Virus record (IMG/VR): IMGVR_UViG_3300042549_005931
Span: 205,134 to 269,133 of that record
Reading direction: 5' to 3' (one strand)
DNA length: 64,000 nucleotides
Part shown: positions 48,835 to 64,000 of the stretch, piece by piece
How the letters are laid out: every line of letters begins with the position of its first letter
How positions within the stretch are numbered: the first letter of the stretch is position 1
Notes under the pieces: model-generated
Told to the model about the DNA's origin: nothing
What the model saw: only the letters and a program-made list of their open reading frames with translations
The model's database searches: none
Program-made: the position numbers and the translations under genes

Positions 48835-49035
48835 TTAAAATTTTCCGGAAATTTTTTTTTCCGATATGGGGGTATATTGGATATTACCGGATTTTTTCCG
48901 GAAAAATTTTCATCGAGGTATTGTCCCCCCTATATAGACCCCCCAAAAAACACTATATAAGGGGGGATACGGGGAGGGGGGTCCCCCCCACATAGGGTGT
49001 AGGGGGTATGTCACCCCGGTAACGTTCCCCCACAG
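48835..49035. other. G/C-homopolymer palindromic element at the strand switch (candidate terminus/pac/origin)
   Basis: TTTTCCGGAAA palindromes; CCCCCCTATATAG/CTATATAAGGGGGG inverted repeat; G-tracts. Confidence 0.55.
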
Positions 49036-49139
49036 TTTAGGGCGTCCTATTCTTCAGACTCTGTAAAAAAATATTACCTTACCTATTGTATATTAAATTG
49101 TAATCAGTTATATTTGTGTGTACCAAATGTAATAATGAA

Positions 49140-49247
49140 ATGAGAAATCAAAAAAAGAGAGATATCTCTCACGACCTTTCCCTCGATGTTATCGGTGTAA
49201 CTATCTTGGGTATGATTGTATGTATGTTCTTATCCTTAATCCTTTAA
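49140..49247 (+). CDS. 35-aa TM peptide
   Basis: MRNQKKRDISHDLSLDVIGVTILGMIVCMFLSLIL*. Confidence 0.55.
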   Translation: MRNQKKRDISHDLSLDVIGVTILGMIVCMFLSLIL

Positions 49248-49251
49248 TGTT

Positions 49252-49440
49252 ATGATGAATAGTTTAAAAAAATCTTTGTTGTTTGGTGGGGTAATCATAT
49301 CCTTTATTGGAATTTTATATCACGTTATCCAAATGATATCAACGAATGAGTTTGTTCATTTTGTATGTTTCTTTTTATGGATGGTTATTAGTGGTGGTCT
49401 TGTCCTATGGTTTGGTCACGAAGAAAATAAGTATTCTTAG
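49252..49440 (+). CDS. small 2-TM protein
   Basis: Two hydrophobic segments. Confidence 0.65.
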   Translation: MMNSLKKSLLFGGVIISFIGILYHVIQMISTNEFVHFVCFFLWMVISGGLVLWFGHEENKYS

Positions 49441-49480
49441 TTCGATTTTTTGTGTTTAATTTTTGTTGTTAGCGATTTTT

Positions 49481-49515
49481 AAAAATCCCTCGGTCTTATA
49501 GGTCGGGGGATTTTT
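49481..49515 (+). terminator. intrinsic terminator (near-copy at 51049-51081)
   Basis: AAAAATCCCTCG-GTCTTATAGGT-CGGGGGATTTTT. Confidence 0.75.
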
Positions 49516-49928
49516 GTTTAAGGAGAATTCTCTACAAGGTTGTAAAGGTGAAAAACTTACCGGGACAATATACCCCGGTAACATATTTTCAGGAACCTGT
49601 TGGTGAGGTCATCGGAACCTTCCGATAGTGTAACGGGAACCTTCCGTAAATTACTCAACCTGGTAATGTTTATCACCCGGACGACCGGTTAATAATTTCT
49701 CAAAAAAAATGTAACCTGGTAATGTTTTCGTGAAGAGAAAAAGTTTTTTCTGTTTTCATTTTTCAACCTGGTAATGTTTTTAAACAAAAGGGGACGTCTG
49801 GTTTTTTTCTTATTTAGAATGAATATAAATTTCATGGGGGTATTGTGTATTCAAGATAAAATCGTTATATTTGTTCACGGTTTTAAAGTAAACCTCAACA
49901 TCGGAAATGGTTCCGAGTTGTCACTCTA

Positions 49929-50237
49929 ATGTTTAATGTTATGGTCTATACCAAAGAAATTATCCAAGAGAAGTTGTCATCAGACATTCGTTGGATTGAG
50001 AGAGGTGTTCTTGTTTTGTTCGGTCGTCAAACCGAGGATGAGAAATCTTCACAAGTTACCAAGTGGGAAAATGGTCGTGGGTTCAATAGTTCAGATAGTC
50101 GTTATCTGACTTATGTTTCAAAGTACCTAATGGGTGGTCGTCATCTATCGGGTAGACATCTTGAAAAGGTGTCCTTGAAGTTACCAAAGTATTGGAAACA
50201 GATTCAAGAAGAAATTCAATTAAAGGGGGGTAGTTAA
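49929..50237 (+). CDS. early phage protein (RQTEDE...NGRGFN motif)
   Basis: 102-aa ORF; no Ala. Confidence 0.75.
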   Translation: MFNVMVYTKEIIQEKLSSDIRWIERGVLVLFGRQTEDEKSSQVTKWENGRGFNSSDSRYLTYVSKYLMGGRHLSGRHLEKVSLKLPKYWKQIQEEIQLKGGS

Positions 50238-50711
50238 CCCCTCTTTTTTTGTGTCTGAAGTGAAAACTTTACCGGGATGATAACTTATATGGTTTAAGGA
50301 ATTATCGTGTCTTAAATCAAAGATTCATCCTGGTAAAGTTTGTCTGGTTCTCATCTGGTTTTTTTTCTGTGTGTTTGGTAATGTATCCTGGTAAACTTTT
50401 GTTTATTTTCCGGTCCGGATGTAACCTTACATCTATTGGTAATACAACCTGGTAAAGTTTATGGGACGAGAAAAAAAATATCATAATATTCTTGTTTTAT
50501 ATACCGGTTTGCCCTACCTTTGTATTGTACCAAATGAGATAATGAAATGAAATAGTCGAAACACAAACTGACAAATAAAAAATAAAAGAAGGAGATGAGG
50601 TTGTTAAAGTTTACCGGGTTGAAAAAGCTTCACCGGTCAGGAACCCTCATAACTTTACCAGGATAAATCCGTCTAAGAAGAAAACAATCACACATTAAAT
50701 TTATAAAACGT

Positions 50712-51023
50712 ATGTATATTACCTTAACTAATTCAAAGTCAAAAAGAAAAACTATTATCAATTGGGGACAAGTTCATTCTTGTTATGAGTTGTTGGATAG
50801 AGAAACGAGAAGTAGAGTAACTAAGATTAACTTTAGTAAAGATAGTTACATCATTGTATCGGAGAAGTTGGAGGACATCCACAAACTATTAACGAAATTA
50901 AACTTTGGTTTATCCCAAGATGTTGAGTGGGATAGTGAACCGAATTTCGATGAGGTTATCGAAGATGAGTATAACACGAACCGTAGAGGAAATTACCGGG
51001 AACGTGATTACAATAGATTTTAG
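50712..51023 (+). CDS. early hypothetical protein (possible FlbD-like small beta domain)
   Basis: YITLT...IIN...TKINF...YIIVSE; no Ala. Confidence 0.6.
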   Translation: MYITLTNSKSKRKTIINWGQVHSCYELLDRETRSRVTKINFSKDSYIIVSEKLEDIHKLLTKLNFGLSQDVEWDSEPNFDEVIEDEYNTNRRGNYRERDYNRF

Positions 51024-51255
51024 ATTGTCAAAAGAGTAGTGTAGATTAAAAACCCTCAATCTTATAGGTTGGGGGTTTTTTGTCGCCTTTAGAAAAAAGG
51101 TGTATTACACTATGGGGGTATTGTATTACACATAAGGGTCGTATTACGTATCCCGGTAAAATAAGGTACCAGGTCCTGACGGTCATGGTCTTGAAAATAA
51201 ATTTATTATGGAGTGTTGTATATTAAGAGAATAGTGTTATATTTGTGAGAACAAA

Positions 51256-51585
51256 ATGATAAATGATATGAGAACTTTTTCAAGAACTTACTACACAGAG
51301 AAACTGAACATTACGATTAGAATAAAAAGAGATGAATTATGTTCGATGGGTTGTCGATTGACAATAAAAGATAGAATGAAAAGAGATTATTGGGGTATGG
51401 ATAGAATTGTTTATTCACAATTTTACAACGATAAGAAGATGTTTACAAAATATCGGAGACAAATGATTGAAACAAAAGTACCGGGAAAGGTGGTTAATGA
51501 AATCATTGACGATATTAAGATGAACCTTAGGTTTGAAAAAGTTGTGGTGTATCAACCAATCGAAACAAAAATGTTTTGGGATTAA
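51256..51585 (+). CDS. early hypothetical protein
   Basis: 109-aa ORF; no Ala. Confidence 0.7.
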   Translation: MINDMRTFSRTYYTEKLNITIRIKRDELCSMGCRLTIKDRMKRDYWGMDRIVYSQFYNDKKMFTKYRRQMIETKVPGKVVNEIIDDIKMNLRFEKVVVYQPIETKMFWD

Positions 51586-51741
51586 TTACCGGGATTTTAT
51601 CCCGTATGAGGTTATCCCGGTAAATTAATGAACCGGGTCCTGACCCGGTCATGGTTGTTATTTAGAATCATTATAAATTTCATTGGGGTATTGTATATTA
51701 AATTAAAAGAGTTATATTTGTATCAATTAAATGATAATGAT

Positions 51742-52551
51742 ATGAAACTAAATGACAAATCCTTAATTAATGTATTGGACAGTAAAGGGTTCAAAGAACA
51801 CCATTTATCGTGGACACAAAAAAATGTTGAGTATTTTTTTACTCACTATGATAAGTTCATGGAAAAATATGGTGATGATAATATTTTTGAGAATTTTTCT
51901 TGTAAAGAGTATTTTTATTCACAAAAAGTTACAAGAAGATTAATTTTTTCAAAAAAGTCTTTGAGTAATTTGGATAACTACCAAGTACCAAAAGAAATAA
52001 GAGTGGAAGTATTAAGAACATTACCTAATCGAGTGGACTTGATACAATTAAATAATGATGAAGTAGTAAAGTATGTAAAAACCGATAAAATGGTTTGTGT
52101 TACTTTTAATATCGAAGATAACCATACTAATGAAATCAAAACGTTTTTCTTTTCAATCAATTTAGAAACGGGTTATGTTTCGTATGATAATTACGATTAT
52201 CAAACTAATAGAGAGATTGAGTTTAATGAAATGAAAGAAAAGTATTACAACAAGTTTATGGTTGTGGTTACTTATTTGGAATTAACCCCCGTTACTTATT
52301 CAATCATTGAGGGTCAAAGAAGTTACGGAACAAAGAAAGAAGATAAGGTAAAGAACGAAACAAATAAACGTTTCATTATGGTAAAAACTAATTGGAACGT
52401 GGAAACAATTAGTCTATTCGATATTCATGTTCGAGGTCATTGGAGATTACAACCTCACGGAGTAGGTCGTTCACAATACAAGTACATCTACATTCAACCT
52501 TTTGAAAAAGGTATTACAAGAAGATTATCACAAAGAGAGTTGGTTTCGTAA
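51742..52551 (+). CDS. early protein with C-terminal VRGHWR motif
   Basis: Restarted at MKLNDK; 269 aa; no Ala. Confidence 0.75.
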   Translation: MKLNDKSLINVLDSKGFKEHHLSWTQKNVEYFFTHYDKFMEKYGDDNIFENFSCKEYFYSQKVTRRLIFSKKSLSNLDNYQVPKEIRVEVLRTLPNRVDLIQLNNDEVVKYVKTDKMVCVTFNIEDNHTNEIKTFFFSINLETGYVSYDNYDYQTNREIEFNEMKEKYYNKFMVVVTYLELTPVTYSIIEGQRSYGTKKEDKVKNETNKRFIMVKTNWNVETISLFDIHVRGHWRLQPHGVGRSQYKYIYIQPFEKGITRRLSQRELVS

Positions 52552-52736
52552 CCAACTTTTTTTTTGTCCTGAGATGGAACAATTTACCGGGATGTTCTAA
52601 AAGTATTACGTCCCGGTAAACTAATTACCTGAGACTCATCTCAAGTTGGTCAAAAAAAAATTAAATTATTTTTTCATATTGTGTTGTATATTAATTTATT
52701 ATGACTTATATTTGTTCACACAAAACAAATAATGAA

Positions 52737-52940
52737 ATGGAAAAAGTTAATGTAGTCCAAACAAGGTACAAGAATCTCACTAATGGTATGAGAGGTACGT
52801 TCAAATTATCCGATGGTACACAAACCAAATTCGAGGTATTCGACAATGGGGAAGTGAAACAAACGGGTACAACCGAAGCTAATCTGTCGGTAACATTCCC
52901 ACACTTAATTGAGTTAGTTCACTTTTTCACCAACCAATAA
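52737..52940 (+). CDS. early hypothetical protein
   Basis: Restarted at MEKVNV. Confidence 0.65.
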   Translation: MEKVNVVQTRYKNLTNGMRGTFKLSDGTQTKFEVFDNGEVKQTGTTEANLSVTFPHLIELVHFFTNQ

Positions 52941-53033
52941 AAATGAAAAGTTTACCGGGGTGGTTAATAGAATTCATAGAATTCCTATTACTCTTATGTG
53001 TATTTATATCTTATTCAGTTAAACTTATCTATA

Positions 53034-53222
53034 ATGGAAAAGACACAACTAATCGGTAAGAGAATCCGAATCAATCACATGGACGACATGTTACCCGTAC
53101 CTGATGGGACAGAAGGGATAATTACCGGGATTGACGACATCGGACAAATACAAGTGAAATGGGATAATGGAAGTACCTTATCCGTAATAGATGATATTGA
53201 TGACTACGAAATCTTAAACTAA
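53034..53222 (+). CDS. DUF4314-like protein
   Basis: GTEGIITGIDDIGQIQVKWDNGSTL. Confidence 0.8.
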   Translation: MEKTQLIGKRIRINHMDDMLPVPDGTEGIITGIDDIGQIQVKWDNGSTLSVIDDIDDYEILN

Positions 53223-53395
53223 TGAACGAACAATTTGTAAAATACATAATGGATATGTTAGAAACTTATCCACAACATAGAAACGATATTCGAGATTTGT
53301 TCAGACTTTGTAAGGACGAAATTAGGGAGGGTGGTTCCCCACAACACGAAATGGACTTATGTCGTAATGACATTGAGGAGTTGGTGAAGGGTTAG
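53222..53395 (+). CDS. 57-aa early protein
   Basis: TAATG overlap; MNEQFVKYIM...ELVKG*. Confidence 0.65.
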   Translation: MNEQFVKYIMDMLETYPQHRNDIRDLFRLCKDEIREGGSPQHEMDLCRNDIEELVKG

Positions 53396-53558
53396 AAAGT
53401 TTACCGGGATAAAGTCTGTATTACTTGTCCCTATCGTATTACATCCTGGTAATATTTTTCCCATCTCCTCGATGAGTGGAGTAAAAAAAATATATCATAT
53501 AATACTTGTTAATATTATAATTGTTTTATAATTTTACTAAACAAAAAATGATATTATA

Positions 53559-54056: not shown

Positions 54057-54271
54057 AGATATTGACAATAAAACTTTACCGGGACAACGTCCCAATATAG
54101 TTACATCCTGGTAAAGTATTTGGTGTCGTTACATCAGTCGGTTCTTCCTTATTTAGAATGATTATAAATTTCATTAAAGTATAAAAATATTTTAGGTTAT
54201 ATTAGTATAAGTCGTATTAAATGACGACCTTTGTTAAGTCGATAATGACACAGAACCTTAAAAGTTTTAAA

Positions 54272-54829
54272 ATGGAAACTTTAATGAATGAGAATGGTGT
54301 AATCACCAAAAATGATTTGGTCTTAATTACTAAGACACAAATGTTAGGTCTGTTTTTGGGAGTAACAAAACCCGAAATGATTAACTTGATAACGGAAACC
54401 AATGTAAAAACCAACAAAACGGGTAACCCCTATTACAAACAACTTGTGAAGAAGTCGAAGTGTAACTATTTGTTATGTTCGGATTATACTACAAGGGTAA
54501 ATAATAACCGAGTTAAAGAGGGTAAAGAAACGGATTTTGTTTCAGAAAAGTCAAGTGGTAAATTTCATATTTCCCCTTGTGTATTGATGGATGAAAAAAC
54601 ACAAACAAAACACTACCTAATGGTGGAGAGGTTTGTGGAGGTTAAACCAAAGGTTCAGTATTTTTTTAATGAAGAACCGATTGAGTTTGATATGTTCAAA
54701 CAATTCTTATCACCAATTAGTGAAAACAAATCACAAGGGTTGGATAGGAAAGTAATTGTAAATACTCCTTTGTTCGATTCGATTGTAGGATTCACTTTCA
54801 GAGGTCGTAAGTATAGTGTAATTGAGTAG
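54272..54829 (+). CDS. early hypothetical protein
   Basis: Restarted at METLMNE; no Ala. Confidence 0.72.
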   Translation: METLMNENGVITKNDLVLITKTQMLGLFLGVTKPEMINLITETNVKTNKTGNPYYKQLVKKSKCNYLLCSDYTTRVNNNRVKEGKETDFVSEKSSGKFHISPCVLMDEKTQTKHYLMVERFVEVKPKVQYFFNEEPIEFDMFKQFLSPISENKSQGLDRKVIVNTPLFDSIVGFTFRGRKYSVIE

Positions 54830-54856
54830 TTCGTTTTTTTCATAGTTTGGTGGTTA

Positions 54857-54888
54857 AAAGGGTAGGACAATGTTCTACCTTTTTTTTT
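54857..54888 (+). terminator. shared cassette terminator (near-copies at 56174, 57253, 60884)
   Basis: AAAAGGGTAGGACAATGTTCTACCTTTTTTTT. Confidence 0.8.
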
Positions 54889-55090
54889 GTCTGATGTTCT
54901 GAGATGGTAAAAGTTTACCGGGATAAGTTAAGTATTACACGGGGGACGAAGAAGACTGGAAAACTTTACCAGGATGGATTTGTCCCGGTAAATTTCCTAC
55001 CTGTCGTTACTGTGTCAGGATTTGTCAAAAAAAATTAAATCTTTTTTGGTATAAGTGTTGGAATTGTAATACCTATTTTGTAATTTAGAT

Positions 55091-55450
55091 ATGTCAAATA
55101 AAAACAATGATATGAATACGAAAACCGTTTACAATGTAATGAGAGGAATTGAACCTTTCACACAAAGAGAATTTGATGTTCACCAAACATTAAAAGTTCT
55201 AACCCACAACAAACTTATTTGGATAACGTGGGGAGTCAATCTTCGAAGTATCTGTGGACTTGAACGTAAGTGTCTTGTCTTCAAACCCAACGGACAATAT
55301 TTTAAAGACTTTGTCTGTGTAACTCTTGGATGGGATGATGTTTACCAGGTTCATTTTATGAACGACAAGTACAAAGTCGTTAAGTCAATTGAAGGTGTGT
55401 ACTTTGATATGTTGGTGGATGTGATTGACGGATACATTGAAACTCGATAA
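55091..55450 (+). CDS. early hypothetical protein
   Basis: 119-aa ORF; no Ala. Confidence 0.72.
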   Translation: MSNKNNDMNTKTVYNVMRGIEPFTQREFDVHQTLKVLTHNKLIWITWGVNLRSICGLERKCLVFKPNGQYFKDFVCVTLGWDDVYQVHFMNDKYKVVKSIEGVYFDMLVDVIDGYIETR

Positions 55451-55571
55451 TTTACCGGGAGGAGAAATCCTCCCGTTAACAAGAGCTACGGTACCAAACT
55501 TTACCGGGATAAAAATAAGTTTTGTAAAATGAAATTAATGTTATATCTTTGTAACCCAAACAAATGACACA

Positions 55572-56153
55572 ATGAATATTAGAGAAGAAAGAATTGACAA
55601 TTACATTTTGAGATTATTTTATGATGAGAGTCCGACGAATCCTCGAGAGGACTACAATCTTACCAGGATGGTGTGTTTCCACAAGAGATACGACTTGGGG
55701 GATAGTCACGACTACAAACACGATGACTACGATAGTTGGGATGAGATGGAGAAGAACATTACCAGGATGGAGAACCCTATTGTTATCAAACCCTTGTATA
55801 TGTACGAACATGGTGGAGTTACTATTAAGACAAGTCCGTTTGGTGATAGATGGGATAGTGGTCAAATTGGTTTTGTCTTTATCCGTAAGGATGATGTACG
55901 GAATGAATTCTCAATCAAGAGATGTGGTCAGAACATGGTGGAGAGATGTGATGTATTACTTGAAGGGGAGGTTGACGTGTATGACAAGTACCTACAAGGA
56001 CAAGTATATGGGTATGAGATAGGTAAAATAAATGAAGATGGTCAGGAAGAAGGTTTAGAAAGATGTGGAGATTATCTTGATGAAGACCAATGTGTTCACG
56101 ATGGAATGGTATCATTGAATTGGTTTAAAGAAAATGAGAAAGTATTGGTTTAG
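55572..56153 (+). CDS. early acidic protein (LYMYEHGG...RWDSGQIG motif)
   Basis: 193-aa ORF; no Ala. Confidence 0.75.
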   Translation: MNIREERIDNYILRLFYDESPTNPREDYNLTRMVCFHKRYDLGDSHDYKHDDYDSWDEMEKNITRMENPIVIKPLYMYEHGGVTIKTSPFGDRWDSGQIGFVFIRKDDVRNEFSIKRCGQNMVERCDVLLEGEVDVYDKYLQGQVYGYEIGKINEDGQEEGLERCGDYLDEDQCVHDGMVSLNWFKENEKVLV

Positions 56154-56398
56154 GTTTTCCTTATTATTGTTTAAAAGGGTAGGACGATGTTCTACCTTTT
56201 TTTTTGTATTACACTTGAGGAGTCTGAAGTCAGGACCTGAACCAAAAGTTTACCGGGATGAGATGTATTACCCCGGTAAAGTTATGAGTCGGAGAAAAAT
56301 TATTTGGTCTTCCAAAAAATAATTAAATTAATTTTTGACAAGTAGTAGGATATTAACTTACTATCAGTTATATTTGTGAACATTTAAACAATAATGAT

Positions 56399-56655: not shown

Positions 56656-56871
56656 ATGTTAATTACAAGAACAAGTCAGATTTCAAGAACCGATTTTACA
56701 ATGGAGTTGGATATTACCTACGACCAATTGGATAGGATTAATAATCGTTACGAGACCAAAGAACTCATTCAGAACATTGTACCAAACTTGTCGAAGGAGG
56801 AACGGGAGTTTTTAATTACCGGGATAACCCCAAAAGAATGGAATGAATTGTTTAACCCAATTGATGTGTAA
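56656..56871 (+). CDS. early hypothetical protein
   Basis: 71-aa ORF; no Ala. Confidence 0.72.
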   Translation: MLITRTSQISRTDFTMELDITYDQLDRINNRYETKELIQNIVPNLSKEEREFLITGITPKEWNELFNPIDV

Positions 56872-56872
56872 A

Positions 56873-57013: not shown

Positions 57014-57014
57014 A

Positions 57015-57230
57015 ATGAAAGTAGTATCAGTCCGTATTACAGAACAACCAAAAGACTTGTTCGACCCACTACCAAGAGTATTCGTAACAACCGAAGATGG
57101 TGTGGAACATTTCCTTTACCAATATTACCCCGATGAGATTAGTTTCACGGAGAGTGAGTTGATGGGATTAACATTAGAAGAGTGTGGTAGATTATATACC
57201 GAGAAAGATATTAGATATTTGAGGTCGTAG
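57015..57230 (+). CDS. early hypothetical protein
   Basis: 71-aa ORF; no Ala. Confidence 0.72.
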   Translation: MKVVSVRITEQPKDLFDPLPRVFVTTEDGVEHFLYQYYPDEISFTESELMGLTLEECGRLYTEKDIRYLRS

Positions 57231-57540
57231 TGGTTTTTTTGTTTGTGGTTATAAAAGGGTGGGACAATGTTCCACCTTTTTTTATGGACTGAAGTCAGGA
57301 ATCTTCTGAGATGGAAAAGTTTACCGGGATGGTGGAGTGTATTACGTCCTGGTAATGTTTGTCTGGCGCAGCTCTGGTCCATCAGGTTATTTATCCCGGT
57401 AAACTTATGAGTCACAGAAAAATTCTTGGATGTTCCAAAAAAAATAATTGTTTTTTTTTCATATAACATTTGTAATTGTAATATTAATTGACTAATTTAG
57501 TGTTGTAGATAATGGTATCTACATTAACCCCTTTAATGTT

Positions 57541-57876: not shown

Positions 57877-58079
57877 TACGAAGGGAGAACGAAAGTTCTC
57901 CTTTTTTTTGTCCCTGATGGTAAAAGTTTACCGGGATACCCTGGTAAAGTTTTCTACCCGTCACTGTCGACAGGTGATAAAAATTAATTAATTTTTTTTG
58001 TTACAAGGTGTTGTTTATATCGAAAATTAAACTATCTTTGTGTGTGGATAATGGTGTCCACAATAATCCAATAAACAAA

Positions 58080-58988
58080 ATGGAAACACAACTCGTTTTA
58101 AATGACCGTATTACACAATTATTAGACCAAACCAACCTGAATTGGAAGGTGAAAGAATCACCTATCTATACTAAGGTAGATGACAATGAGATTTTAGTAT
58201 CAGATAAAAAAGTATTACTTCGTGAAGACACACACGAGATTTTAGGTTTACACTCTGATGGATATGTACCGTTCCAAAATTATGAGATGTTAGAATTACT
58301 TGATAAGGTTTCTCAACAAACGGGTTTACCAATTCATAGAGGTGGTTTGTTTGGTAACGGTAAGAAGGTGTATATCCAACTTCAATCACACGAGTTCAGA
58401 ATTCAGAATGTTGGTGGAGTTTGGGACACTATCTCAGGATATGTTACCGGGATAAACTCATTCGATGGTTCCACTTCATTATCATTTGGTCCTAGTACCA
58501 AAACAATCTCATGTCAAAATACTTTCTTTGGAGCTTATAAGGAAATGGGTACAAAGATTCGTCACACAAAAAACATGGGGGTAAAGATTGACGAGGTGTG
58601 TAGACGAATTGAAGGTGTGTTGGTAGAGGAGAGAAACAACTTCGAAAATATCAAGAAGATGTCTGAAAGTCCTTTTGAGATGAACACATTAGATTCTGTA
58701 ATACGAACTATGTTTGACCTTGACCGTAATGTGGATTTAAAAGATACTGATAAATTATCGGGGGTAACTCGTAATAAATTATCTCGATTCTATATCGACC
58801 TTAACGGTGAACTTCGTGAGAAGGGTAACAATGTTTGGGGATTGATGTCGGGTGTAACAAAATATACTACTCACTCTGTGATTAAGGGTGATAACTCCGA
58901 GAAAAAGATGTTTGGTAGTACGGGTAATCGTGAGAGAAAGATTTTCTCCGACCTTGTAAACTATACCAACCACTTGGAACTCGTTTAA
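58080..58988 (+). CDS. DUF932/DUF945-family protein
   Basis: LNWKV...LLREDT..ILG...YVPFQN...GKKVY...NSFDGS...TISCQNT; 1 Ala in 302 aa. Confidence 0.8.
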   Translation: METQLVLNDRITQLLDQTNLNWKVKESPIYTKVDDNEILVSDKKVLLREDTHEILGLHSDGYVPFQNYEMLELLDKVSQQTGLPIHRGGLFGNGKKVYIQLQSHEFRIQNVGGVWDTISGYVTGINSFDGSTSLSFGPSTKTISCQNTFFGAYKEMGTKIRHTKNMGVKIDEVCRRIEGVLVEERNNFENIKKMSESPFEMNTLDSVIRTMFDLDRNVDLKDTDKLSGVTRNKLSRFYIDLNGELREKGNNVWGLMSGVTKYTTHSVIKGDNSEKKMFGSTGNRERKIFSDLVNYTNHLELV

Positions 58989-58992
58989 GATT

Positions 58993-59160
58993 TGTTGTCG
59001 ATAGGTGAAAACCTAAATTAACTCACCGATGTCTTGGTGAGAGAAGAATAAGGATAAGTATTACAGGGTGTCCCTACCGACAATGTTGGACTTAAAATAT
59101 TCACCCCGTATTACCGAGTGTGGGAGGTTTTGTAAAATCATTAACCCACATCCTTATTAA
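58993..59160 (+). ncRNA. putative pseudoknotted RNA downstream of the DUF932 gene
   Basis: TTGTCG/CGACAA, TAGGT-GAAA-ACCTA, AATAAGGAT/ATCCTTATT, TGTGGG/CCCACA; terminator at 59168-59198. Confidence 0.5.
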
Positions 59161-59415
59161 AGACACTAAAACCCTCTACCCAACGGAGGGTTTTTTTATT
59201 GCCCTCAGGAACCTGAAGACAGGACCTGGGTGAAAAGTTTACCGGGATATCCTGGTAATGTTTCCACCATGCGCTGGAGCTGCGCTGTAATCGTCCCGGT
59301 AAAGTATTGGAGCTGCGCTGTACTGTGTTAATTAAAAAAATTATTTAACAAAGTAGTATGATATTAACTTAATAGTGTTATCTTTGTAAATCGTTTCACA
59401 TAAACAATAAATGAT

Positions 59416-59751
59416 ATGAAAAGTGGTAACATTGTGGATTTAAGTAACCTCGATACACGGGATTTAATCGAGGAGTTACAGAACAGGGGGTATATGACCG
59501 GTTTGTTATTTTGTAGGGAGGATGTAGACCTTCAACTTGAAAGTTTAAATGATGGGTATCGTGGTCTAAACCTTACCTTGACTGATGAGGAAAAGGACGA
59601 AATCCTTGAAGGAGACTTACCTATTGATTGGACTTGTGAAAGAATCAATGAGAGTATCTATGATGGTGTCTTTAATTTTTTCAGTGAGGAGATTAATAAG
59701 TGGGAGGAAAAAGATTTGGGTGAGAAGATGAGAAACGGATTTGGAAACTAA
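59416..59751 (+). CDS. early acidic protein
   Basis: 111-aa ORF; no Ala. Confidence 0.72.
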   Translation: MKSGNIVDLSNLDTRDLIEELQNRGYMTGLLFCREDVDLQLESLNDGYRGLNLTLTDEEKDEILEGDLPIDWTCERINESIYDGVFNFFSEEINKWEEKDLGEKMRNGFGN

Positions 59752-60031
59752 TAAATTACCAGGATATATGGAAACATTTCAATTTTACAAAGACGAAAAG
59801 ATGACGATTTGGTATCGTGGTAAGTTCGAGGTCGAAGCTAACTCGGAGGAGGAAGCTATCGAGATGGTTAAGGAACTTGAAAAGACAAATAAGTTAGATA
59901 ACTACGATGTTTATTGGGAAATTTTGGATGACACTATGGAAGGGTTAACGGTGGGAGATAATGGTGGTTATTCCACAGAAGAAATATACACAGGTAGTGG
60001 AGACATAATTTGGGCCAATGGAAAGGAATAG
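59741..60031 (+). CDS. early acidic protein
   Basis: FEVEANSEEEAIE motif. Confidence 0.72.
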   Translation: METNKLPGYMETFQFYKDEKMTIWYRGKFEVEANSEEEAIEMVKELEKTNKLDNYDVYWEILDDTMEGLTVGDNGGYSTEEIYTGSGDIIWANGKE

Positions 60032-60242
60032 TGTAATCAAGAAACTCAGGGACGGTGAACCATTGGAACTTTACCGGGATGGATTGTTCATTACTCTCCA
60101 ACTAAACAAACGACATAAAAGAATTTGTTGGGAACGATGGGTATCTGTTAACAAAACCTCTTGGATGAATTGGAATTTATTCTTATCTTTACGGGACGTA
60201 ATACAAATCTATAATGATTATGAAAAAAGAAAAACTGATTAA
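60018..60242 (+). CDS. early hypothetical protein
   Basis: Overlapping operon ORF. Confidence 0.65.
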   Translation: MERNSVIKKLRDGEPLELYRDGLFITLQLNKRHKRICWERWVSVNKTSWMNWNLFLSLRDVIQIYNDYEKRKTD

Positions 60243-60543
60243 GAAAATCCAACAGGTGTTGGATGACTTGGACACTCGTAGTATTAATGTACATGAGTTA
60301 GACACGGAATCATCGATTAACATTGGTGATTTGGCCAACGGTGATATAACGGAATGTGTAGAAACACTTCGTTACGATGATGTATCCACCATAGTTTACC
60401 ACAACGGTAACGAGATAGAGTGGAGTGATAAAGATTACCGGGACTTACCTCTCAATACATTAGAGGAAATCCTTGAAGCTTTACAATACTATAAAATAGG
60501 TTTTGACAAAACATTAGACGTAATACGAGATGAAAACTATTAA
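60220..60543 (+). CDS. early acidic protein
   Basis: Overlapping operon ORF, restarted at MKKEKL. Confidence 0.68.
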   Translation: MKKEKLIKKIQQVLDDLDTRSINVHELDTESSINIGDLANGDITECVETLRYDDVSTIVYHNGNEIEWSDKDYRDLPLNTLEEILEALQYYKIGFDKTLDVIRDENY

Positions 60544-60823: not shown

Positions 60824-61090
60824 TTTGTAAGATGTTACTTATATTTTGATTACAAATTATTTGTGTTCATATTTTGTGTTTGGGAAAAGGGTTGGCAGAA
60901 ATGTCAACCTTTTTTTGTGCTCGTGTATTACCTGTGCACTGTACCTGCACAGCAGTGAAGTTTACCGGGACAACCTGGTAATGTATTACCTGCAGCAACT
61001 GCAGAGCCTTCAGGTAAAAAAAGTTATTAAATAATGTTTGTTATATTGAAAACTATTTTGTAATTTTAATCCATCAAATAAACAAATGAT

Positions 61091-61858
61091 ATGGAATTTA
61101 AAAACTTAACACAAACAAAAAAGGATTTAGGACTTAACTATTTAGGTTCGGTTAGTAAAACCACCAAACATATTAAGTCAATTGAGTACAACGAATTGGT
61201 TTACACTATCTACTTGTCACCTGCAGACAGTAGTGGGTATGAGGTGTGTCCATTACGAAACGACGAATGTACCGACCTTTGCCTTAATGAGTCCGGTATG
61301 AACCGAATGAGTATGAATGACGAATTGATTAATAGAAGTCGTATCAAAAAAACTAAATTGTTTTTTGAGAACCGTGAATACTTTGTCAAGTGGATGGTAT
61401 ACGAAATCGAATCCACCAAACTAAAAGCTGAAAAACTTGGTATGAGTTTTAGTGTACGTATCAATAATACTTCAGACATTAATCCTTTATCATTTTATCT
61501 TGAAGTTAACGGAAAAAAATTAAATGTATTGGATTTATTCCCCGATGTACAATTTTACGATTATACAAAAGTTCCCAACCGAATGAAGTTAATGATGTTA
61601 TATCCTAATTACGATTTGACATTTTCTTATGACGGTTATAATAAAGATACTTGTCTACAGATGTTAGAAAATAATGTTAGGGTGGCCGTTGTGTTTGATA
61701 AGTTACCGGGAGAATTATGGGGGTACAAAGTTATCGATGGTGACTTGTATGACATGAGATATCGAGATGAGAAAAATGTAATTGTCGGACTGAAGTTCAA
61801 ACGAGTTCGAAAGAAACTACATAAGGATTATAAGTTCGTAATACAAAACCCACAATGA
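61091..61858 (+). CDS. GP88-like protein (Cys-motif, radical-SAM-like)
   Basis: EVCP...CTDLCL...VRINNTSD...QFYDYTK...YDLTFS...IDGD...VGLKFK. Confidence 0.78.
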   Translation: MEFKNLTQTKKDLGLNYLGSVSKTTKHIKSIEYNELVYTIYLSPADSSGYEVCPLRNDECTDLCLNESGMNRMSMNDELINRSRIKKTKLFFENREYFVKWMVYEIESTKLKAEKLGMSFSVRINNTSDINPLSFYLEVNGKKLNVLDLFPDVQFYDYTKVPNRMKLMMLYPNYDLTFSYDGYNKDTCLQMLENNVRVAVVFDKLPGELWGYKVIDGDLYDMRYRDEKNVIVGLKFKRVRKKLHKDYKFVIQNPQ

Positions 61859-62108
61859 TGTGGGTTTTTTTATGCACTCAGGAATCTGAAGGCAGGACCT
61901 GGATGAAAAGTTTACCGGGATATCCTGGTAAAGTTCCATTTGGGAAACACAGCAGCGCAAAACCATCCCGGTAAAGTTTCCCTGGCAACAACAGCAGCGC
62001 TGACTTCAGAAAAAAAATTAAAATATTTTTTACCTATGTGTTGTGATTTAGTAAAAATGTATTATCTTTGTACAAGTAATAAGTCAAACAATTTAAACTT
62101 TTAATGTT

Positions 62109-62657
62109 ATGGGATTAGATATGTATCTATCGAAAAAGACCTATGTTAAACAATGGTCACACGACAAACCCGAAGAACAATTCGAGGTGTCTGTTAAACG
62201 AGGTGGTAAACCTTTCAAGAAAATCGAATCAAGTCGGGTTTCTTATGTTACGGAAGAATTGATGTATTGGAGAAAAGCCAATCAGATTCATGGATGGTTT
62301 GTACACAACACACAGGAAATTGTGGAGGAAGTCAAATACTATGTAACCAAAGAAGATTTGGATAACTTACTTGATGTTTGTAAACAAGTATTGGATGTTA
62401 TGAGTAAGTCCAAGATGAAGACAGTCCAAGTTCGTAGTGGTTGGAGTGGTGGTGAGGAAACTTATTCCGATGTTGAAACTTACGATTGTGAGGATGAGAT
62501 TAGAGAATTACTCCCACCAACAGAAGGATTCTTCTATGGTTCTTACGAGATTGATGAGTGGTATAAACAAGCCATCGAGGAAACTGTGGAGTTCTTGGAA
62601 AAAGAATTACCAAAGTCCGATGAACACGATGACTTCGAGTATTACGCGAGTTGGTAA
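62109..62657 (+). CDS. conserved phage protein (MGLDMY...YWRKANQIHGWF motif)
   Basis: 182-aa ORF with a recognisable phage motif. Confidence 0.75.
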   Translation: MGLDMYLSKKTYVKQWSHDKPEEQFEVSVKRGGKPFKKIESSRVSYVTEELMYWRKANQIHGWFVHNTQEIVEEVKYYVTKEDLDNLLDVCKQVLDVMSKSKMKTVQVRSGWSGGEETYSDVETYDCEDEIRELLPPTEGFFYGSYEIDEWYKQAIEETVEFLEKELPKSDEHDDFEYYASW

Positions 62658-62719
62658 TATAAAAAAATAATCGGGATATCGTTTGGAATAATGGTATCCC
62701 TTTTATAATTTTGTAAACG

Positions 62720-62968
62720 ATGAAAGATTTATTCAATAATTCAAGACCAGTTCAGATTGAAATCGGTGAATGGTGGTTCAACGGGAGATTCATCCAAAAA
62801 CAGGTGCATCCGTTGCTTAGTCCTTATGTATCCTTTAATGATAATGAGGATGGTTATATGGTTCAAACTCACACAACCTTTAAGGAAGCAACTAAGTATT
62901 GTTTGGATAATCCTTGTAATACCCCACAACACCAACCAAAAGATTTTATAAGTTCATTTAAAAACTAA
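62720..62968 (+). CDS. hypothetical protein
   Basis: 82-aa ORF; TAATTTTG upstream. Confidence 0.65.
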   Translation: MKDLFNNSRPVQIEIGEWWFNGRFIQKQVHPLLSPYVSFNDNEDGYMVQTHTTFKEATKYCLDNPCNTPQHQPKDFISSFKN

Positions 62969-62974
62969 TATCAT

Positions 62975-63682
62975 ATGCCCAATTGGTGTAGTAACTATAT
63001 TACGATTTCGGGAGAGGAATCTAATATGAAACCCTTATACGATTTTTTTCGTGAAGGTGAAGAAATAGTCGAAACGTATTACAAACAATTCAGAGAATTC
63101 CGTGAGAACTTTCCTGATGAGGACGCGTTTAACTCAATAGGTATGAAAGAGGTATTCGTTATGTCTACCCTTGTACCTGAGGATGAGGAATTTGAAAAGA
63201 TTAAAGAGAGTGGTCAATATCTGTTATCACCTTACACAGAATTTTGGGGTTGTAAGTGGGACATCCATATTCACGACGGACTAATCACTGAGTGTACTCC
63301 AACAAAGATTCAATTATCACCAATAACCGCTTGGTCACCACCTGAACCATTCTGTAAAAGATTGTCAAAGAAGTATGGTGTTGATGTGGAGATTAGTTTT
63401 TTCGAGGGTGGAGCTAACTTCGCTGGTCGTAGTCGTTTTTCAAACGGAAAAGAAATCGAGAGTGTAATGTATACCTATCGTGAAGGGATGTATTACTTGG
63501 AAACTGAAATTTTTTGGGGGGAGACCTATAGTGATTTAGAATGGATGTTCTGTGAAAATCCAAATATCACATTCGACGAAGTGTTAGGACAGATGTACCC
63601 TTTCGTTAAAGATGAGAATGATATAAAAGAATTAAACGAACTCTATCATAATTTTAAAGTAGATGAAACAACAGGAGAATAA
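62975..63682 (+). CDS. YubB/DUF1281-like ferredoxin-fold protein
   Basis: MPNWCSN...WGCKWD...TAWSPP...FFEGG..FAG. Confidence 0.78.
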   Translation: MPNWCSNYITISGEESNMKPLYDFFREGEEIVETYYKQFREFRENFPDEDAFNSIGMKEVFVMSTLVPEDEEFEKIKESGQYLLSPYTEFWGCKWDIHIHDGLITECTPTKIQLSPITAWSPPEPFCKRLSKKYGVDVEISFFEGGANFAGRSRFSNGKEIESVMYTYREGMYYLETEIFWGETYSDLEWMFCENPNITFDEVLGQMYPFVKDENDIKELNELYHNFKVDETTGE

Positions 63683-63938
63683 ATTGAGAGTAAAGTATAG
63701 TAACTTTCAAACCAATATGAATTTCAACGAGTGGGCACAAACCTTTAAGGTGTCCACTCTTGTCCCTGAACAATTTGATAGATGGGACAGCAAGTTAGAT
63801 AAGTGTAATGAGAGTGAAAAACGAATGATGATTACTTCCATGTATGAGAACGATATCACCATCCCAATCAGTACAAGAATTTTAAGTAGTATAAAACAAT
63901 TAATAAATAAAGAAAGATGTCAAGAGAAAACAGATTAA
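63663..63938 (+). CDS. hypothetical protein
   Basis: Overlapping ORF. Confidence 0.6.
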   Translation: MKQQENKLRVKYSNFQTNMNFNEWAQTFKVSTLVPEQFDRWDSKLDKCNESEKRMMITSMYENDITIPISTRILSSIKQLINKERCQEKTD

Positions 63939-64000
63939 CAGGTGGAGTATTTACCGGGATTGTAGGTACCTCCGAAAAAATTAGTTCATACGATAAGTTT

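What the first reader, a model, noticed from the sequence alone, without database searches (positions are those of the whole stretch)
49014..63960. Dense polar array of a TTACCRGG(A) DNA motif confined to the early region
Seen: about 55 copies in 15 kb and none noticed in the left 48 kb. Spacers typically open with AAAAGTTTACCGGGAT and contain inverted partners at variable distance, including near-palindromes TTTACCGGGATATCCTGGTAAW (59238, 61911; similar at 57927, 60961). About 12 copies lie inside CDS (e.g. 50993, 53122, 55660, 55759, 56816, 58444, 59756, 60070, 60435, 61703). These fall in different reading frames (LPG, ITG, YRD) and are all + oriented, while reverse copies are only intergenic. 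This points to selection on DNA rather than protein, as with Chi, KOPS or parS sites. Inference: loading or orientation sites for a protein that pulls in, protects or organises the first-entering DNA, or recombination sites for cassette shuffling.
Basis: partly seen in the sequence, partly recalled or inferred. Interest (0 to 1): 0.87.

Follow-up and report, generated by a model that had tools for sequence, protein, structure and literature searches.

The report
Polar DNA word punctuating phage early genes
A 14-16-base asymmetric DNA word occurs 54 times in the early-gene block of an uncultivated 269-kb phage. It follows strict orientation rules and is conserved in related phages even at silent codon positions, so it is most likely a binding site for an unknown protein that controls or insulates these genes.

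Summary
TTACCRGG occurs 54 times (31 on +, 23 on -), all between 49015 and 63958, against about 3 expected. The full consensus is AAAsTTTACCRGGAT.

The window is the last 64 kb of a 269-kb viral contig that is cut inside the array. Eleven metagenomic relatives (70-93 % identical) carry the same array. They show it spans about 18.5 kb and is bounded on both sides by oppositely oriented, motif-free genes.

- **Block type.** It consists of short units with Bacteroidota-type host promoters and intrinsic terminators, encoding small ORFans and anti-restriction-type families.
- **Spacer grammar.** The order is terminator, forward copies, reverse copies, about 95 nt, promoter. The divergent arrangement never occurs.
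- **In-gene copies.** All are co-oriented with the gene and conserved at third codon positions (96 % versus 71 % in flanks).
- **Evidence against selected pairing.** There is no pairing covariation, and same-orientation tandem arrays vary in copy number (4 versus 12).

The best reading is a sequence-specific protein site on double-stranded DNA that acts with polarity to transcription. It sits in terminator-promoter junction modules that are also crossover points for cassette gain and loss. The nearest analogues are L5 stoperators and T4-type PeSLs. The binder and the function are not shown.

The parts
49015..63958 (.). The whole motif array as visible in the window: 54 copies of TTACCRGG, 31 on + and 23 on -. 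It continues beyond the contig end.
   Evidence: Relatives L129 and L139 show about 3.5 kb more of the array beyond the window end.
48644..49115 (.). Left boundary. This is a divergent non-coding region between the - strand genes and the + strand block. It holds a conserved element with G/C runs and TTCCGGAA palindromes (about 48840-49060), the first motif copy (49015, -), and the first host-type promoter (-7 box at about 49109).
   Evidence: It is 83 % identical to L143.
49441..49928 (+). Junction module S1: terminator, 49557(+), then reverse copies at 49574, 49659, 49715 and 49767 (the last three 52-56 bp apart), then a promoter (-7 box at 49866).
   Evidence: The orthologous spacer in L143 has 12 reverse copies, 11 of them at 52-82-bp spacing (mostly 53-58 bp).
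50238..50711 (+). Junction module S2: terminator (50222-50246), 50269(+), reverse copies at 50329, 50387 and 50448, a promoter (-7 box at 50515), then two forward copies in the 5' leader (50611, 50655).
51024..51255 (+). Junction module S3: GTATTAC three times, a reverse copy at 51152, and a promoter (-7 box at 51238). Its forward partner is the in-gene copy at 50993.
51586..51741 (+). Junction module S4: 51586(+) directly after the stop codon, 51616(-), and a promoter (-7 box at 51713).
51629..52610 (+). Insertion/deletion cassette (promoter, gene 51742-52551, terminator, forward copy). It is absent from L126, L144 and L143. It is flanked by direct reverse copies TCCCGGTAAA at 51616 and 52612.
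   Evidence: alignment A1.
52552..52736 (+). Junction module S5: terminator, 52584(+), GTATTAC, 52612(-), A/T run, and a promoter (-7 box at 52707).
52941..53033 (+). Short spacer with a lone forward copy at 52952.
53396..53558 (+). Junction module S6: 53401(+), GTATTAC twice, 53445(-).
54057..54283 (+). Junction module S7: 54076(+), 54107(-).
54830..55090 (+). Junction module S8: bidirectional terminator (54856-54884), 54915(+), 54966(+), 54984(-), and an A/T run.
55451..55571 (+). Junction module S9: 55452(+), 55501(+), no reverse copy. The -7 box at 55544 lies 43 nt after the second forward copy.
56154..56398 (+). Junction module S10: terminator (56173-56201), 56250(+), GTATTAC, 56272(-), and a promoter.
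57231..57540 (+). Junction module S11: terminator, 57321(+), 57348(-), 57395(-).
57877..58079 (+). Junction module S12: terminator (57880-57905), the near-palindrome 57928(+)/57940(-), and a promoter (-7 box at 58033).
58989..59415 (+). Junction module S13: terminator (59168-59194), the near-palindrome 59239(+)/59251(-), 59295(-), GC-rich GCTGCGCTG words, and a promoter.
   Evidence: L144 has a two-gene cassette inserted here, flanked by repeats of about 40 nt that include a reverse copy.
59752..59767 (+). Forward copy at 59756, between a stop codon and the next ATG inside an operon.
60824..61090 (+). Junction module S14: terminator, the pair 60962(+)/60974(-), and GTATTAC on both sides.
60975..61923 (+). 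GP88 cassette (gene 61091-61858). It is absent from L142, where the crossover lies within the forward/reverse pair module.
   Evidence: alignment A3.
61859..62108 (+). Junction module S15: terminator, the near-palindrome 61912(+)/61924(-), 61967(-), and a promoter (-7 box at 62063).
50993..51000 (+). In-gene copy (reads N-Y-R-E), 30 nt before the stop codon.
53122..53129 (+). In-gene copy (reads I-T-G-I) in the DUF4314 gene.
55342..55349 (+). In-gene copy (reads V-Y-Q-V).
55660..55667 (+). In-gene copy (reads L-T-R-M).
55759..55766 (+). In-gene copy (reads I-T-R-M).
56816..56823 (+). In-gene copy (reads I-T-G-I).
58444..58451 (+). In-gene copy (reads V-T-G-I) in the DUF932 gene.
60071..60078 (+). 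In-gene copy (reads L-Y-R-D).
60435..60442 (+). In-gene copy (reads D-Y-R-D).
61703..61710 (+). In-gene copy (reads L-P-G) in the GP88 gene.
63951..63958 (+). In-gene copy (reads F-T-G-I) in the gene cut by the contig end.

Best explanation
The motif, AAAsTTTACCRGGAT with core TTACCRGG, is a recognition site on double-stranded DNA for a sequence-specific protein of this phage family. The protein has not been identified.

The sites punctuate one block of about 18.5 kb made of short, co-oriented early transcription units that the host RNA polymerase reads. Each unit ends with an intrinsic terminator followed 23-49 nt later by one or more forward sites. The next unit begins with one or more reverse sites, the last of which lies 85-99 nt upstream of the promoter's -7 box. 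Further forward sites lie inside genes, always co-oriented with transcription.

My inference is that the bound protein acts with polarity towards transcription. In one orientation RNA polymerase can pass it, or it blocks elongation on command. In the other orientation it stops read-through before the next promoter. The array would then insulate, and probably coordinately shut off or time, the early units. This is how the asymmetric operators and 'stoperators' of the mycobacteriophage L5 repressor work.

Because the same word sits in every terminator-promoter junction, the junctions are also the places where homologous exchange adds and removes gene cassettes, as described for PeSL cassettes of T4-type phages.

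**Shown:** the sites, their grammar, their conservation, and cassette ends at the sites.

**Inferred:** protein binding, polarity of action, and a regulatory purpose.
For: 1. **Sequence-specific constraint on single sites.**
   - In-gene copies are 97.5 % identical in relatives against 85 % for flanks. At third codon positions the figures are 96 % against 71 %.
   - In intergenic copies the 7 fixed bases are 100 % conserved in about 40 comparisons per orientation. The R position flips freely and flanks are 75-79 % identical.
2. **An asymmetric, self-contained word.** No second box occurs at a fixed distance.
3. **Polarity.**
   - In-gene copies are 11 to 0 co-oriented in the window.
   - In relatives' ORFs of at least 100 aa the count is 30 to 0, after setting aside two spurious ORFs.
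   - Coding constraints cannot explain this, because two of three frames tolerate the reverse word.
4. **Grammar.** Adjacent arrangements within 70 nt are +- 44, -- 30, ++ 18 and -+ 0. The last reverse copy lies 85-99 nt from the -7 box, in two classes about 10 nt apart. Forward copies follow predicted terminators by 23-49 nt.
5. **Evidence against selected base pairing.**
   - Forward-to-reverse distance varies from 12 to 65 nt.
   - There is no covariation at the R/Y position: G/C 22, G/T 12, A/C 5, A/T 2.
   - There is no strand asymmetry in folding energy (p = 0.23).
   - Same-orientation tandem arrays differ in copy number between relatives, 4 against 12, as iterated protein sites do.
6. 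**The block is driven by host-type promoters.** The pattern TTG-N17-21-TAnnTTTG occurs 11 times on + against 1.0 expected. Terminator-like sites number 29 against 10 expected.
7. **Documented precedent.** The L5-type repressor binds more than 20 asymmetric 13-mers. Their orientation tracks transcription and their reversal abolishes repression (PMC9283540).
Against: - No binder was identified. Pfam finds no DNA-binding domain in any early-block protein. The one HTH protein in the window was not located and is not among the 20 small ORFs checked individually, including those closest to the array.
- In L5 all sites share one orientation relative to transcription. Here 23 of 54 are reversed, and the model needs an extra assumption to explain them.
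- Many units have no forward site inside the transcribed part, so 'silencing' cannot be general. Insulation fits better than shut-off.
- The constant distance of about 95 nt to the promoter may only reflect common descent of duplicated junction modules. Two module types are visible.
- The conservation statistics treat related sequences as independent, and BLAST may anchor on the motif.
- There are no expression or binding data, because the phage is uncultivated.
Confidence: 0.4

Rival explanations
1. The motif is only the stem of a conserved stem-loop, a bidirectional attenuator or terminator in the junction modules, as in PeSLs. On this view its sequence is uniform because of recent duplication and gene conversion between junctions, not because a protein reads it.
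For: - Forward/reverse pairs occur in 13 of the 16 full junction spacers and are flanked by an A-run and a T-rich tail (AAAAG...AGTTTT).
- Four motif-containing hairpins are scored as terminator-like, two of them complete forward/reverse pairs on the + strand.
- G-T pairs in stems are also described for PeSL stem-loops (PMC2839356).
- Indels are flanked by these modules.
Against: - Lone in-gene copies have no partner, yet they are conserved at synonymous sites.
- Tandem arrays of up to 12 reverse copies, or 3-5 forward copies, cannot pair with one another.
- There is no covariation: A/C mismatches (5) outnumber A/T pairs (2).
- Loops reach about 50 nt.
- The unit-specific terminators already present differ in sequence, so a stem as such does not require this word.
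Confidence: 0.2
2. The sites are the ends of mobile gene cassettes, cut and joined by a dedicated recombinase or transposase. This would be an integron- or TIR-like system in a phage. Each cassette would be [reverse site - promoter - gene - terminator - forward site].
For: - The (+)n(-)m grammar with no -+ arrangement equals cassettes bounded by inverted ends.
- Three of three indels examined are flanked by direct copies of a site.
- Gene content varies greatly between relatives.
Against: - No integrase, transposase or recombinase family was found in the left 49 kb or in the block. Note that 205 kb of the genome is unseen.
- Breakpoints are not closer to the motif than random intergenic positions.
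- One junction repeat is about 40 nt long, which is typical of homologous exchange.
- No inversions between + and - copies were seen.
- In-gene copies under purifying selection make no sense as cassette ends.
Confidence: 0.1
3. The motif is a polar signal for a DNA-tracking or DNA-coating machine. It could be a Chi-like signal against an end-entering nuclease, or an orienting or loading site for a protein that pulls in or protects the first-entering DNA.
For: - Copies inside genes are co-oriented, and the density is high.
- The block is almost free of GpC, the usual target of phage C5-MT/TET/glycosyl hypermodification (PMC8256090). It may therefore be the unmodified, unprotected part of the genome.
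Against: - 43 % of copies point the other way and are tied to promoters and terminators.
- A Chi-type word should be frequent in host genomes, but the five sampled hits of the genome scan showed only 2-5 copies per 8 kb.
- In relatives the block is internal, flanked by genes on both sides.
- Nothing shows which DNA enters first.
Confidence: 0.1
4. The motif works in RNA: UUACCRGG in early mRNAs would be the target of a ribonuclease or RNA-binding protein, comparable to T4 RegB acting on GGAG.
For: In-gene copies are all in the sense orientation and are therefore present in mRNA.
Against: - Most copies (43 of 54) lie after terminators and before promoters, so they are transcribed only by read-through.
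- Reverse copies and their tandem arrays have no role in this model.
- There is no Rfam match and no strand asymmetry.
Confidence: 0.08
5. The sites are targets of an epigenetic switch. The CCNGG core would be methylated by the phage C5-methyltransferase encoded in the block, changing promoter use over time.
For: - Every copy contains CCNGG.
- CCNGG is depleted elsewhere: O/E 0.43 in the left 49 kb, and 9 non-motif sites against about 24 expected in the block.
- A C5-MTase gene lies inside the array in relatives.
Against: - The conserved word is 14-16 nt, far longer than any C5-MTase specificity.
- The MTase is closest to DNMT3-type enzymes, and phage enzymes of this context usually act at GpC (PMC8256090).
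- The R position flips freely between A and G.
Confidence: 0.07

Closest known systems
Operator/'stoperator' sites of the mycobacteriophage L5 (cluster A) immunity repressor gp71
   Same: - Both have dozens of copies of an asymmetric word of about 13-16 bp in one phage genome.
- Copies lie in short intergenic spaces and at promoters.
- Orientation correlates with the direction of transcription.
- Host RNA polymerase transcribes the target genes (PMC9283540).
   Different: - Here the density is about ten times higher (one per 280 bp).
- The sites are confined to one 18.5-kb block instead of spread genome-wide.
- 43 % of copies are reversed in a fixed forward-then-reverse grammar.
- Copies lie inside genes, and tandem arrays occur.
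- No gp71-like or other HTH protein was found in the block.
- The phage is a 269-kb uncultivated phage with Bacteroidota-type promoters, and nothing indicates lysogeny.
PeSL (promoter-early stem-loop) mobile regulatory cassettes of T4-type phages
   Same: - Both are repeated composite terminator/promoter junctions: a host-type early promoter, an AT-rich upstream region, and a stem-loop with G-T pairs.
- Both are concentrated in a plastic region of small ORFans.
- In both, indels between close relatives are flanked by the repeats (PMC2839356, PMC4122927; searches compared).
   Different: - PeSLs are defined by the promoter consensus and a generic stem-loop, not by one conserved asymmetric word.
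- Lone co-oriented in-gene copies under synonymous-site constraint are not described for them.
- Same-orientation tandem arrays are not described for them.
- A strict forward-then-reverse grammar is not described for them.
Phage P1 C1 repressor operators
   Same: An asymmetric 17-bp operator is dispersed at many promoters. Some operators are 'bivalent' pairs in inverted orientation.
   Different: P1 has about 17-20 sites over the whole genome and a known repressor. Sites inside genes with a polarity rule are not a feature.
Chi, KOPS and parS polar or centromere-like DNA words
   Same: They are short over-represented words whose orientation matters.
   Different: - Those are skewed genome-wide, and Chi and KOPS are shared with the host chromosome.
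- Here the word is confined to one transcription block, is nearly balanced in orientation overall, and was not found as an array in the genome collection.
- No canonical ParB is present.

Membership tests
L5-type operator/stoperator system | Many copies of one asymmetric site of about 13 bp in the phage genome. | tested here: met
   There are 54 copies of an asymmetric 14-16-nt consensus. They are confined to one block, not spread genome-wide.
L5-type operator/stoperator system | Site orientation follows the direction of transcription. | tested here: inconclusive
   Inside genes the count is 11 to 0, and 30 to 0 in relatives. However, 23 of the 43 intergenic copies are reversed, always downstream of the forward ones.
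L5-type operator/stoperator system | A monomeric two-domain HTH repressor (gp71 family) is encoded by the phage. | tested here: inconclusive
   No HTH or other DNA-binding Pfam family was found in block proteins. One HTH_38/GerE-type protein lies somewhere in 1-49 kb. 205 kb of the genome is unseen.
L5-type operator/stoperator system | The bound site blocks elongation in one orientation only. | not testable with these tools
   This needs a reporter assay with the binder.
PeSL-type regulatory cassettes | A composite of a host-type early promoter, an AT-rich upstream region and a stem-loop/terminator in intergenic spacers. | tested here: met
   (11 promoters against 1 expected; 29 terminator-like sites against 10).
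PeSL-type regulatory cassettes | Concentrated in a plastic region, upstream of small genes of unknown function. | tested here: met
   There are 16 junction spacers in 15 kb. Most proteins have no family match, and gene content varies among relatives.
PeSL-type regulatory cassettes | Indels between close relatives are flanked by the repeats. | tested here: met
   Three of three junctions examined meet this. In the overall breakpoint test, breaks are enriched in spacers but not specifically at the motif.
PeSL-type regulatory cassettes | Formation of excised mini-circles. | not testable with these tools
   This needs phage DNA.
Chi/KOPS-type polar words | Genome-wide strand skew, and sharing with the host chromosome. 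| tested here: not met
   The overall ratio is 31 to 23. There are zero copies in 49 kb of flanking phage DNA. The five sampled genome hits showed no arrays.
ParB/parS | A palindromic site of about 16 bp plus a canonical ParB (CTPase N-domain, HTH, dimerisation domain). | tested here: not met
   - Only 4 of 13 window pairs are contiguous palindromes, and single sites are conserved on their own.
- The neighbouring protein has only a ParB_N/Srx-like core with DGHHR.
- Phage ParB-like proteins of this context are documented as activators of base dioxygenases (PMC13229309).
Integron attC cassettes | An adjacent integrase with attI, promoterless cassettes, and imperfect inverted repeats recombined as folded single strands. 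| tested here: not met
   No integrase family was found. Each cassette has its own promoter. There is no strand asymmetry or covariation.

The most novel reading that the evidence does not exclude
The word could be the address label of a new kind of phage genome compartment. On this reading, a protein reads a directional 16-nt signal to mark, coat or mobilise the block of anti-defence cassettes. That block is the only part of the genome kept free of GpC, and hence probably free of the phage's own base hypermodification. The system would combine polar transcription control with dedicated cassette exchange, a phage counterpart of an integron whose 'attC' also acts as an insulator.
Probability: 0.12. 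Interest if true: 0.85.

Novelty: new variant of a known kind. Interest (0 to 1): 0.62.

Why it matters
Early 'host-takeover' and anti-defence blocks are the fastest-changing and least understood parts of large phage genomes.

Here a single conserved, directional word marks every unit of such a block across a family of uncultivated phages. This gives three things:
- **A handle to find the regulator.** The word can be used for DNA-affinity capture.
- **A computational flag.** It marks early or anti-defence islands in metagenomic contigs of this family.
- **A concrete case for study.** It shows how regulatory junctions double as crossover points for swapping cassettes.

If the polarity reflects an orientation-dependent block to RNA polymerase, it would extend the stoperator principle. 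That principle is so far known from temperate actinobacteriophages. This case would carry it to a phage with no detected lysogeny genes and Bacteroidota-type promoters.

Tried and rejected
- **Close relatives in phage isolates.** There is no megablast match. Distant DNA and protein matches reach only jumbo Xanthomonas/Stenotrophomonas phage glycosyltransferases and generic DUF932 proteins.
- **IMG/VR.** The 16-mer, a degenerate 16-mer and the DUF932 protein each found only the source contig.
- **Walking beyond the window.** The viral-contig store ends at the window end. The exact-protein look-up showed that this is the contig end. Two conserved probes taken from relatives' extensions found nothing at the other contig end.
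- **Literal motif in the literature.** Only primers and unrelated sequences turned up.
- **Regular spacing of forward copies.** Not significant.
- **Second promoter box at a fixed distance from the motif.** None found, so the motif is not a two-box promoter for a phage polymerase.
- **RNA or single-strand hairpin selection.** There is no covariation and no strand asymmetry, and no Rfam family matches.
- **Motif-specific breakpoints.** They are no better than random intergenic positions.
- **ParB_N-like neighbour as the binder.** Rejected as unsupported.
- **Locating the HTH protein.** Two rounds of 10 small ORFs did not find it.
- **Cellular genomes.** The five sampled hits held only isolated copies (2-5 per 8 kb).
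- **C5-MTase specificity.** It could not be inferred; the best structural relatives are DNMT3-type enzymes.

Full report
**1. The observation**

TTACCRGG occurs 54 times in the window, 31 on + and 23 on -. All copies lie between 49015 and 63958, and there are none in the first 49,014 bases. Dinucleotide-preserving shuffles give 3.1 on average and never more than 9.

An unbiased k-mer contrast of the right 15 kb against the left 49 kb puts words of this motif at the top for k = 7 to 10. Oriented alignment of the copies extends the consensus to AAA[G/C]TTTACCRGGAT.

**2. Source of the window**

The window is positions 205134-269133 of a 269,133-bp viral contig: IMGVR_UViG_3300042549_005931, which is also GCA_043534435.1 JBFDMA010013334.1. 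The right end of the window is the contig end and cuts a gene, so the array is truncated. The other 205 kb could not be read. The complete scan for the commonest 16-mer found no further copy on that contig.

No cultured relative exists in the phage collection. The rest of the window carries:
- 14 tRNA genes and a genuine tmRNA;
- tail-collar, lysis and nuclease genes;
- a set of glycosyltransferases, methyltransferases and 2OG-Fe(II) oxygenases that suggests DNA hypermodification.

**3. The block**

From about 49.1 kb onward all genes are on the + strand, and before 48.6 kb they are on the - strand. The block holds about 30 small genes in about 16 transcription units.

The Bacteroidota-type two-box promoter pattern (TTG, 17-21 nt, TAnnTTTG) occurs 11 times on the + strand against 1.0 expected, nearly always just upstream of a start codon. 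Terminator-like hairpins number 29 against 10 expected.

The few recognisable proteins are DUF932, GP88, a DUF1281_C/Api92-like protein, DUF4314 and a weak DpnD/PcfM match. These families are typical of anti-restriction or early islands. 'Early block transcribed by the host polymerase' is therefore a reasonable inference, and so is a Bacteroidota host. Neither is shown.

**4. Grammar**

Printing every spacer with its features marked shows one plan:
- stop codon;
- intrinsic terminator with a T-run;
- 23-49 nt later, one or more forward copies;
- 0-45 nt, often containing a second enriched word, GTATTAC;
- one to four reverse copies;
- a unit-specific inverted repeat and an A-run/T-run;
- the promoter.

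Pooling the window and six relatives, adjacent copies within 70 nt are arranged +- 44 times, -- 30 times, ++ 18 times and -+ never. The last reverse copy starts 85-99 nt upstream of the -7 box, in two classes about 10 nt apart. No second conserved box lies at a fixed distance from either kind of copy.

**5. Copies inside genes**

Eleven copies lie inside genes, all co-oriented with the gene, in three reading frames. Shuffling synonymous codons within each gene gives 1.3 forward and 0.2 reverse copies on average, with at most 5 forward copies in 1000 shuffles. The reverse word is compatible with two of three frames, so coding cannot explain its absence.

**6. Relatives**

A paired-motif pattern scanned over metagenome contigs returned 20 stretches. 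Eleven of them are homologous to the block at 70-93 % nucleotide identity and carry the motif at the same density, for example 48 copies in 9.1 kb in L144 and 45 in 13.4 kb in L143.

One 23.5-kb contig (L143 plus L129) and L139 extend beyond the window end. They show that the array continues for about 3.5 kb. It then stops at a conserved non-coding region, after which genes are again on the other strand. On the left, about 6 kb of flank in L143 has no copy. The array is therefore co-extensive with the co-oriented block, about 18.5 kb.

The same paired pattern returned only five stretches from the cellular genome collection, each holding 2-5 copies in 8 kb and none homologous to the window.

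**7. Constraint**

Around the 11 in-gene copies, relatives are 97.5 % identical within the 8-mer and 85 % in the flanks. At third codon positions the figures are 96 % and 71 % (Fisher p about 1e-9, with the caveat that the relatives are not independent).

In relatives' ORFs of at least 100 aa, 30 copies are co-oriented. The two exceptions are spurious ORFs.

For intergenic copies, the seven fixed bases are identical in all of about 40 orthologous comparisons per orientation. The R position changes in about 20 %, and the flanks are 75-79 % identical. The word is therefore under purifying selection as a nucleotide sequence, whether alone or paired.

**8. Pairing or protein?**

Forward and reverse copies could form a hairpin, and a few are scored as terminator-like. 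Several results argue against selected pairing:
- The distance between partners ranges from 12 to 65 nt.
- The variable position shows no covariation: G/C 22, G/T 12, A/C 5, A/T 2, which is what independence predicts.
- The + strand folds no better than the - strand (p = 0.23).
- Lone copies are conserved.
- The first spacer of the block has 4 reverse copies in the window but 12 in L143, 11 of them spaced 52-82 bp apart (mostly 53-58 bp).

These features fit iterated protein sites on duplex DNA better than an RNA or cruciform structure. No Rfam family matches.

**9. Cassette turnover**

Collinear blocks between the window and its relatives break mostly in spacers. Of the block ends, 32 % lie within 15 nt of a motif centre, against 10 % for random positions but 26 % for random intergenic positions. 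The motif itself is therefore not demonstrably the breakpoint.

At base resolution, three of three indels are flanked by direct repeats that include a copy:
- The cassette 51629-52610 lies between two TCCCGGTAAA copies, and 'empty' relatives keep one.
- The GP88 cassette is missing in L142, with the crossover inside the forward/reverse pair.
- A two-gene cassette in L144 is flanked by repeats of about 40 nt.

No integrase, transposase or recombinase family was found in the window. This is the pattern described for PeSL cassettes of T4-type phages (PMC2839356, PMC4122927).

**10. Mechanism**

The best-supported account is a sequence-specific DNA-binding protein whose asymmetric site is used with polarity to transcription.

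The documented precedent is the mycobacteriophage L5-type repressor. [quoted passage not shown] Their orientation tracks transcription, and reversing a site abolishes repression (PMC9283540).

Applied here:
- Forward sites, inside genes and just after terminators, are the orientation compatible with, or controlling, rightward transcription.
- Reverse sites, which occur only in non-transcribed DNA just upstream of each promoter, would stop read-through and insulate the next unit.

This explains four things: the confinement to the block, the grammar, the absence of reverse copies in genes, and the selection on single copies. It does not identify the protein. It needs a separate role for the reversed copies, which L5 does not have. 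It also cannot be a general shut-off, because several units have no internal forward site. I give it 0.4. The broader claim, that this is a protein-recognition site on DNA, I put at roughly 0.65-0.7.

**11. Candidate binders**

The ParB_N-like gene next to the array (44870-45805, -) has only an Srx/ParB-fold core with DGHHR. In phages, such proteins next to 2OG oxygenases are documented activators of base dioxygenases with only trinucleotide preference (PMC13229309). It is not a good candidate.

One HTH_38/GerE-type protein exists somewhere in the left 49 kb, but 20 small ORFs checked individually, including those closest to the array, did not contain it.

**12. Rivals**

These are set out in the rival list with their evidence: a pure stem-loop attenuator (0.2), dedicated cassette recombination (0.1), a Chi- or coat-like polar signal (0.1), an RNA target (0.08) and a methylation switch (0.07).

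**13. Side observations that may matter**

- GATC is absent from all 64 kb, with about 180 expected.
- GpC is almost absent from 49-59 kb (O/E 0.00-0.10 in nine of ten 1-kb bins, 0.24 in the other; about 19 sites in 10 kb). The depletion starts exactly at the left edge of the array, and the same is seen in the relative.
- Phage C5-methyltransferases that feed TET-type oxygenases and glycosyltransferases mostly act at GpC (PMC8256090). A C5-methyltransferase gene lies in the block in relatives. The window also carries oxygenases and glycosyltransferases. The early block may therefore be kept free of the phage's own base modification.
- CCNGG, the core of the motif, is depleted everywhere except in the motif.

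**14. Verdict**

The feature is real, non-random, conserved and under selection. Its nearest relatives in concept are known (stoperators, PeSLs), and its function and binder are unknown. I file it as a new variant of a known kind, with interest 0.62.

Noticed in passing
window 49001-59000 (and L143+L129 oriented 6001-15000): The GpC dinucleotide is almost absent. O/E is 0.00-0.10 in nine of ten 1-kb bins and 0.24 in the other, about 19 sites in 10 kb, and GGC and CGC codons number 0 in early genes. The depletion starts exactly at the array's left edge. The rest of the window has O/E of about 0.66. Phage C5-MT/TET/glycosyltransferase pathways act at GpC (PMC8256090), so the early block may be kept free of hypermodified bases.
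   Followed up: partly
window 1-64000: GATC is completely absent: 0 observed against about 136 + 46 expected from a first-order Markov model. This suggests strong avoidance of a GATC-specific host system.
   Followed up: no
window 1-64000: CCNGG is depleted outside the motif. O/E is 0.43 in the left 49 kb, and there are 9 non-motif sites against about 24 expected in the block. The remaining sites are often ACCNGGT. CCGG itself is over-represented (O/E 1.7-2.1).
   Followed up: partly
L139:4061-5029 (-), about 0.5-1.5 kb beyond the window end; orthologue in L129: A C-5 cytosine methyltransferase gene (PF00145, 1e-30; closest solved structures are DNMT3A/B) lies inside the motif array and itself carries co-oriented motif copies.
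   Followed up: partly
window 92-5468 and 10336-10737: There is a cluster of 14 tRNA genes and a phage-encoded tmRNA. The tmRNA is called by ARAGORN and confirmed by Rfam RF00023 (87 bits, E = 3e-34).
   Followed up: partly
window 48840-49060: A conserved non-coding element sits at the divergent left boundary. It has long G and C runs and three TTCCGGAA-type palindromes, and is 83 % identical in L143. It could be an origin, a packaging site or a regulatory site.
   Followed up: no
L139 original coordinates 1300-2000; L129: The right boundary of the block is a non-coding region of about 700 nt, rich in GTATTAC and (T)ACCGG words. It includes a 79-nt stretch identical between two relatives that are otherwise about 80-90 % identical.
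   Followed up: no
window 49000-64000, e.g. 51102-51150, 52603, 53418-53441, 56265, 57339: A second enriched word, GTATTAC, occurs 23 times on + and 8 times on - in the block, against 9 in the left 49 kb. It lies mostly between forward and reverse motif copies or just before a reverse copy.
   Followed up: partly
window 59265-59330, 60926-61010, 61942-62000: GC-rich words (GCTGCGCTG, CAGCAGCGC, CTGCAG) are repeated in the spacers S13-S15 of a block that is otherwise nearly free of GpC. GCGC has O/E of about 19 there.
   Followed up: no
window, upstream of most early start codons (e.g. 49127-49143, 50535-50550, 51256-51272, 51729-51744, 56386-56401, 59402-59418): A conserved leader of the type AATGATAATGAWATG, with several nested ATGs, lies immediately before the start codon. 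AATGATAT occurs 9 times on + and 0 times on - in the block. It may be a translation-initiation context in a host that does not use Shine-Dalgarno sequences.
   Followed up: no
window 17675-26136, 41692-42303, 44870-45805: Several genes suggest a DNA hypermodification module:
- a TylF-type methyltransferase fused to HtrL_YibB and a weak TAGT-like domain (784 aa);
- several glycosyltransferases;
- three 2OG-Fe(II) oxygenase hits;
- DUF1599;
- a ParB_N-like protein with DGHHR.

Compare the ParB-dependent phage dioxygenases described in PMC13229309.
   Followed up: partly
window 62109-63682: A stretch of about 2 kb inside the block (three genes and spacer 62658-62719) has no motif copy. The gap is conserved in L129 and L139. 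Its short spacer has a terminator and a promoter but lacks the word.
   Followed up: no
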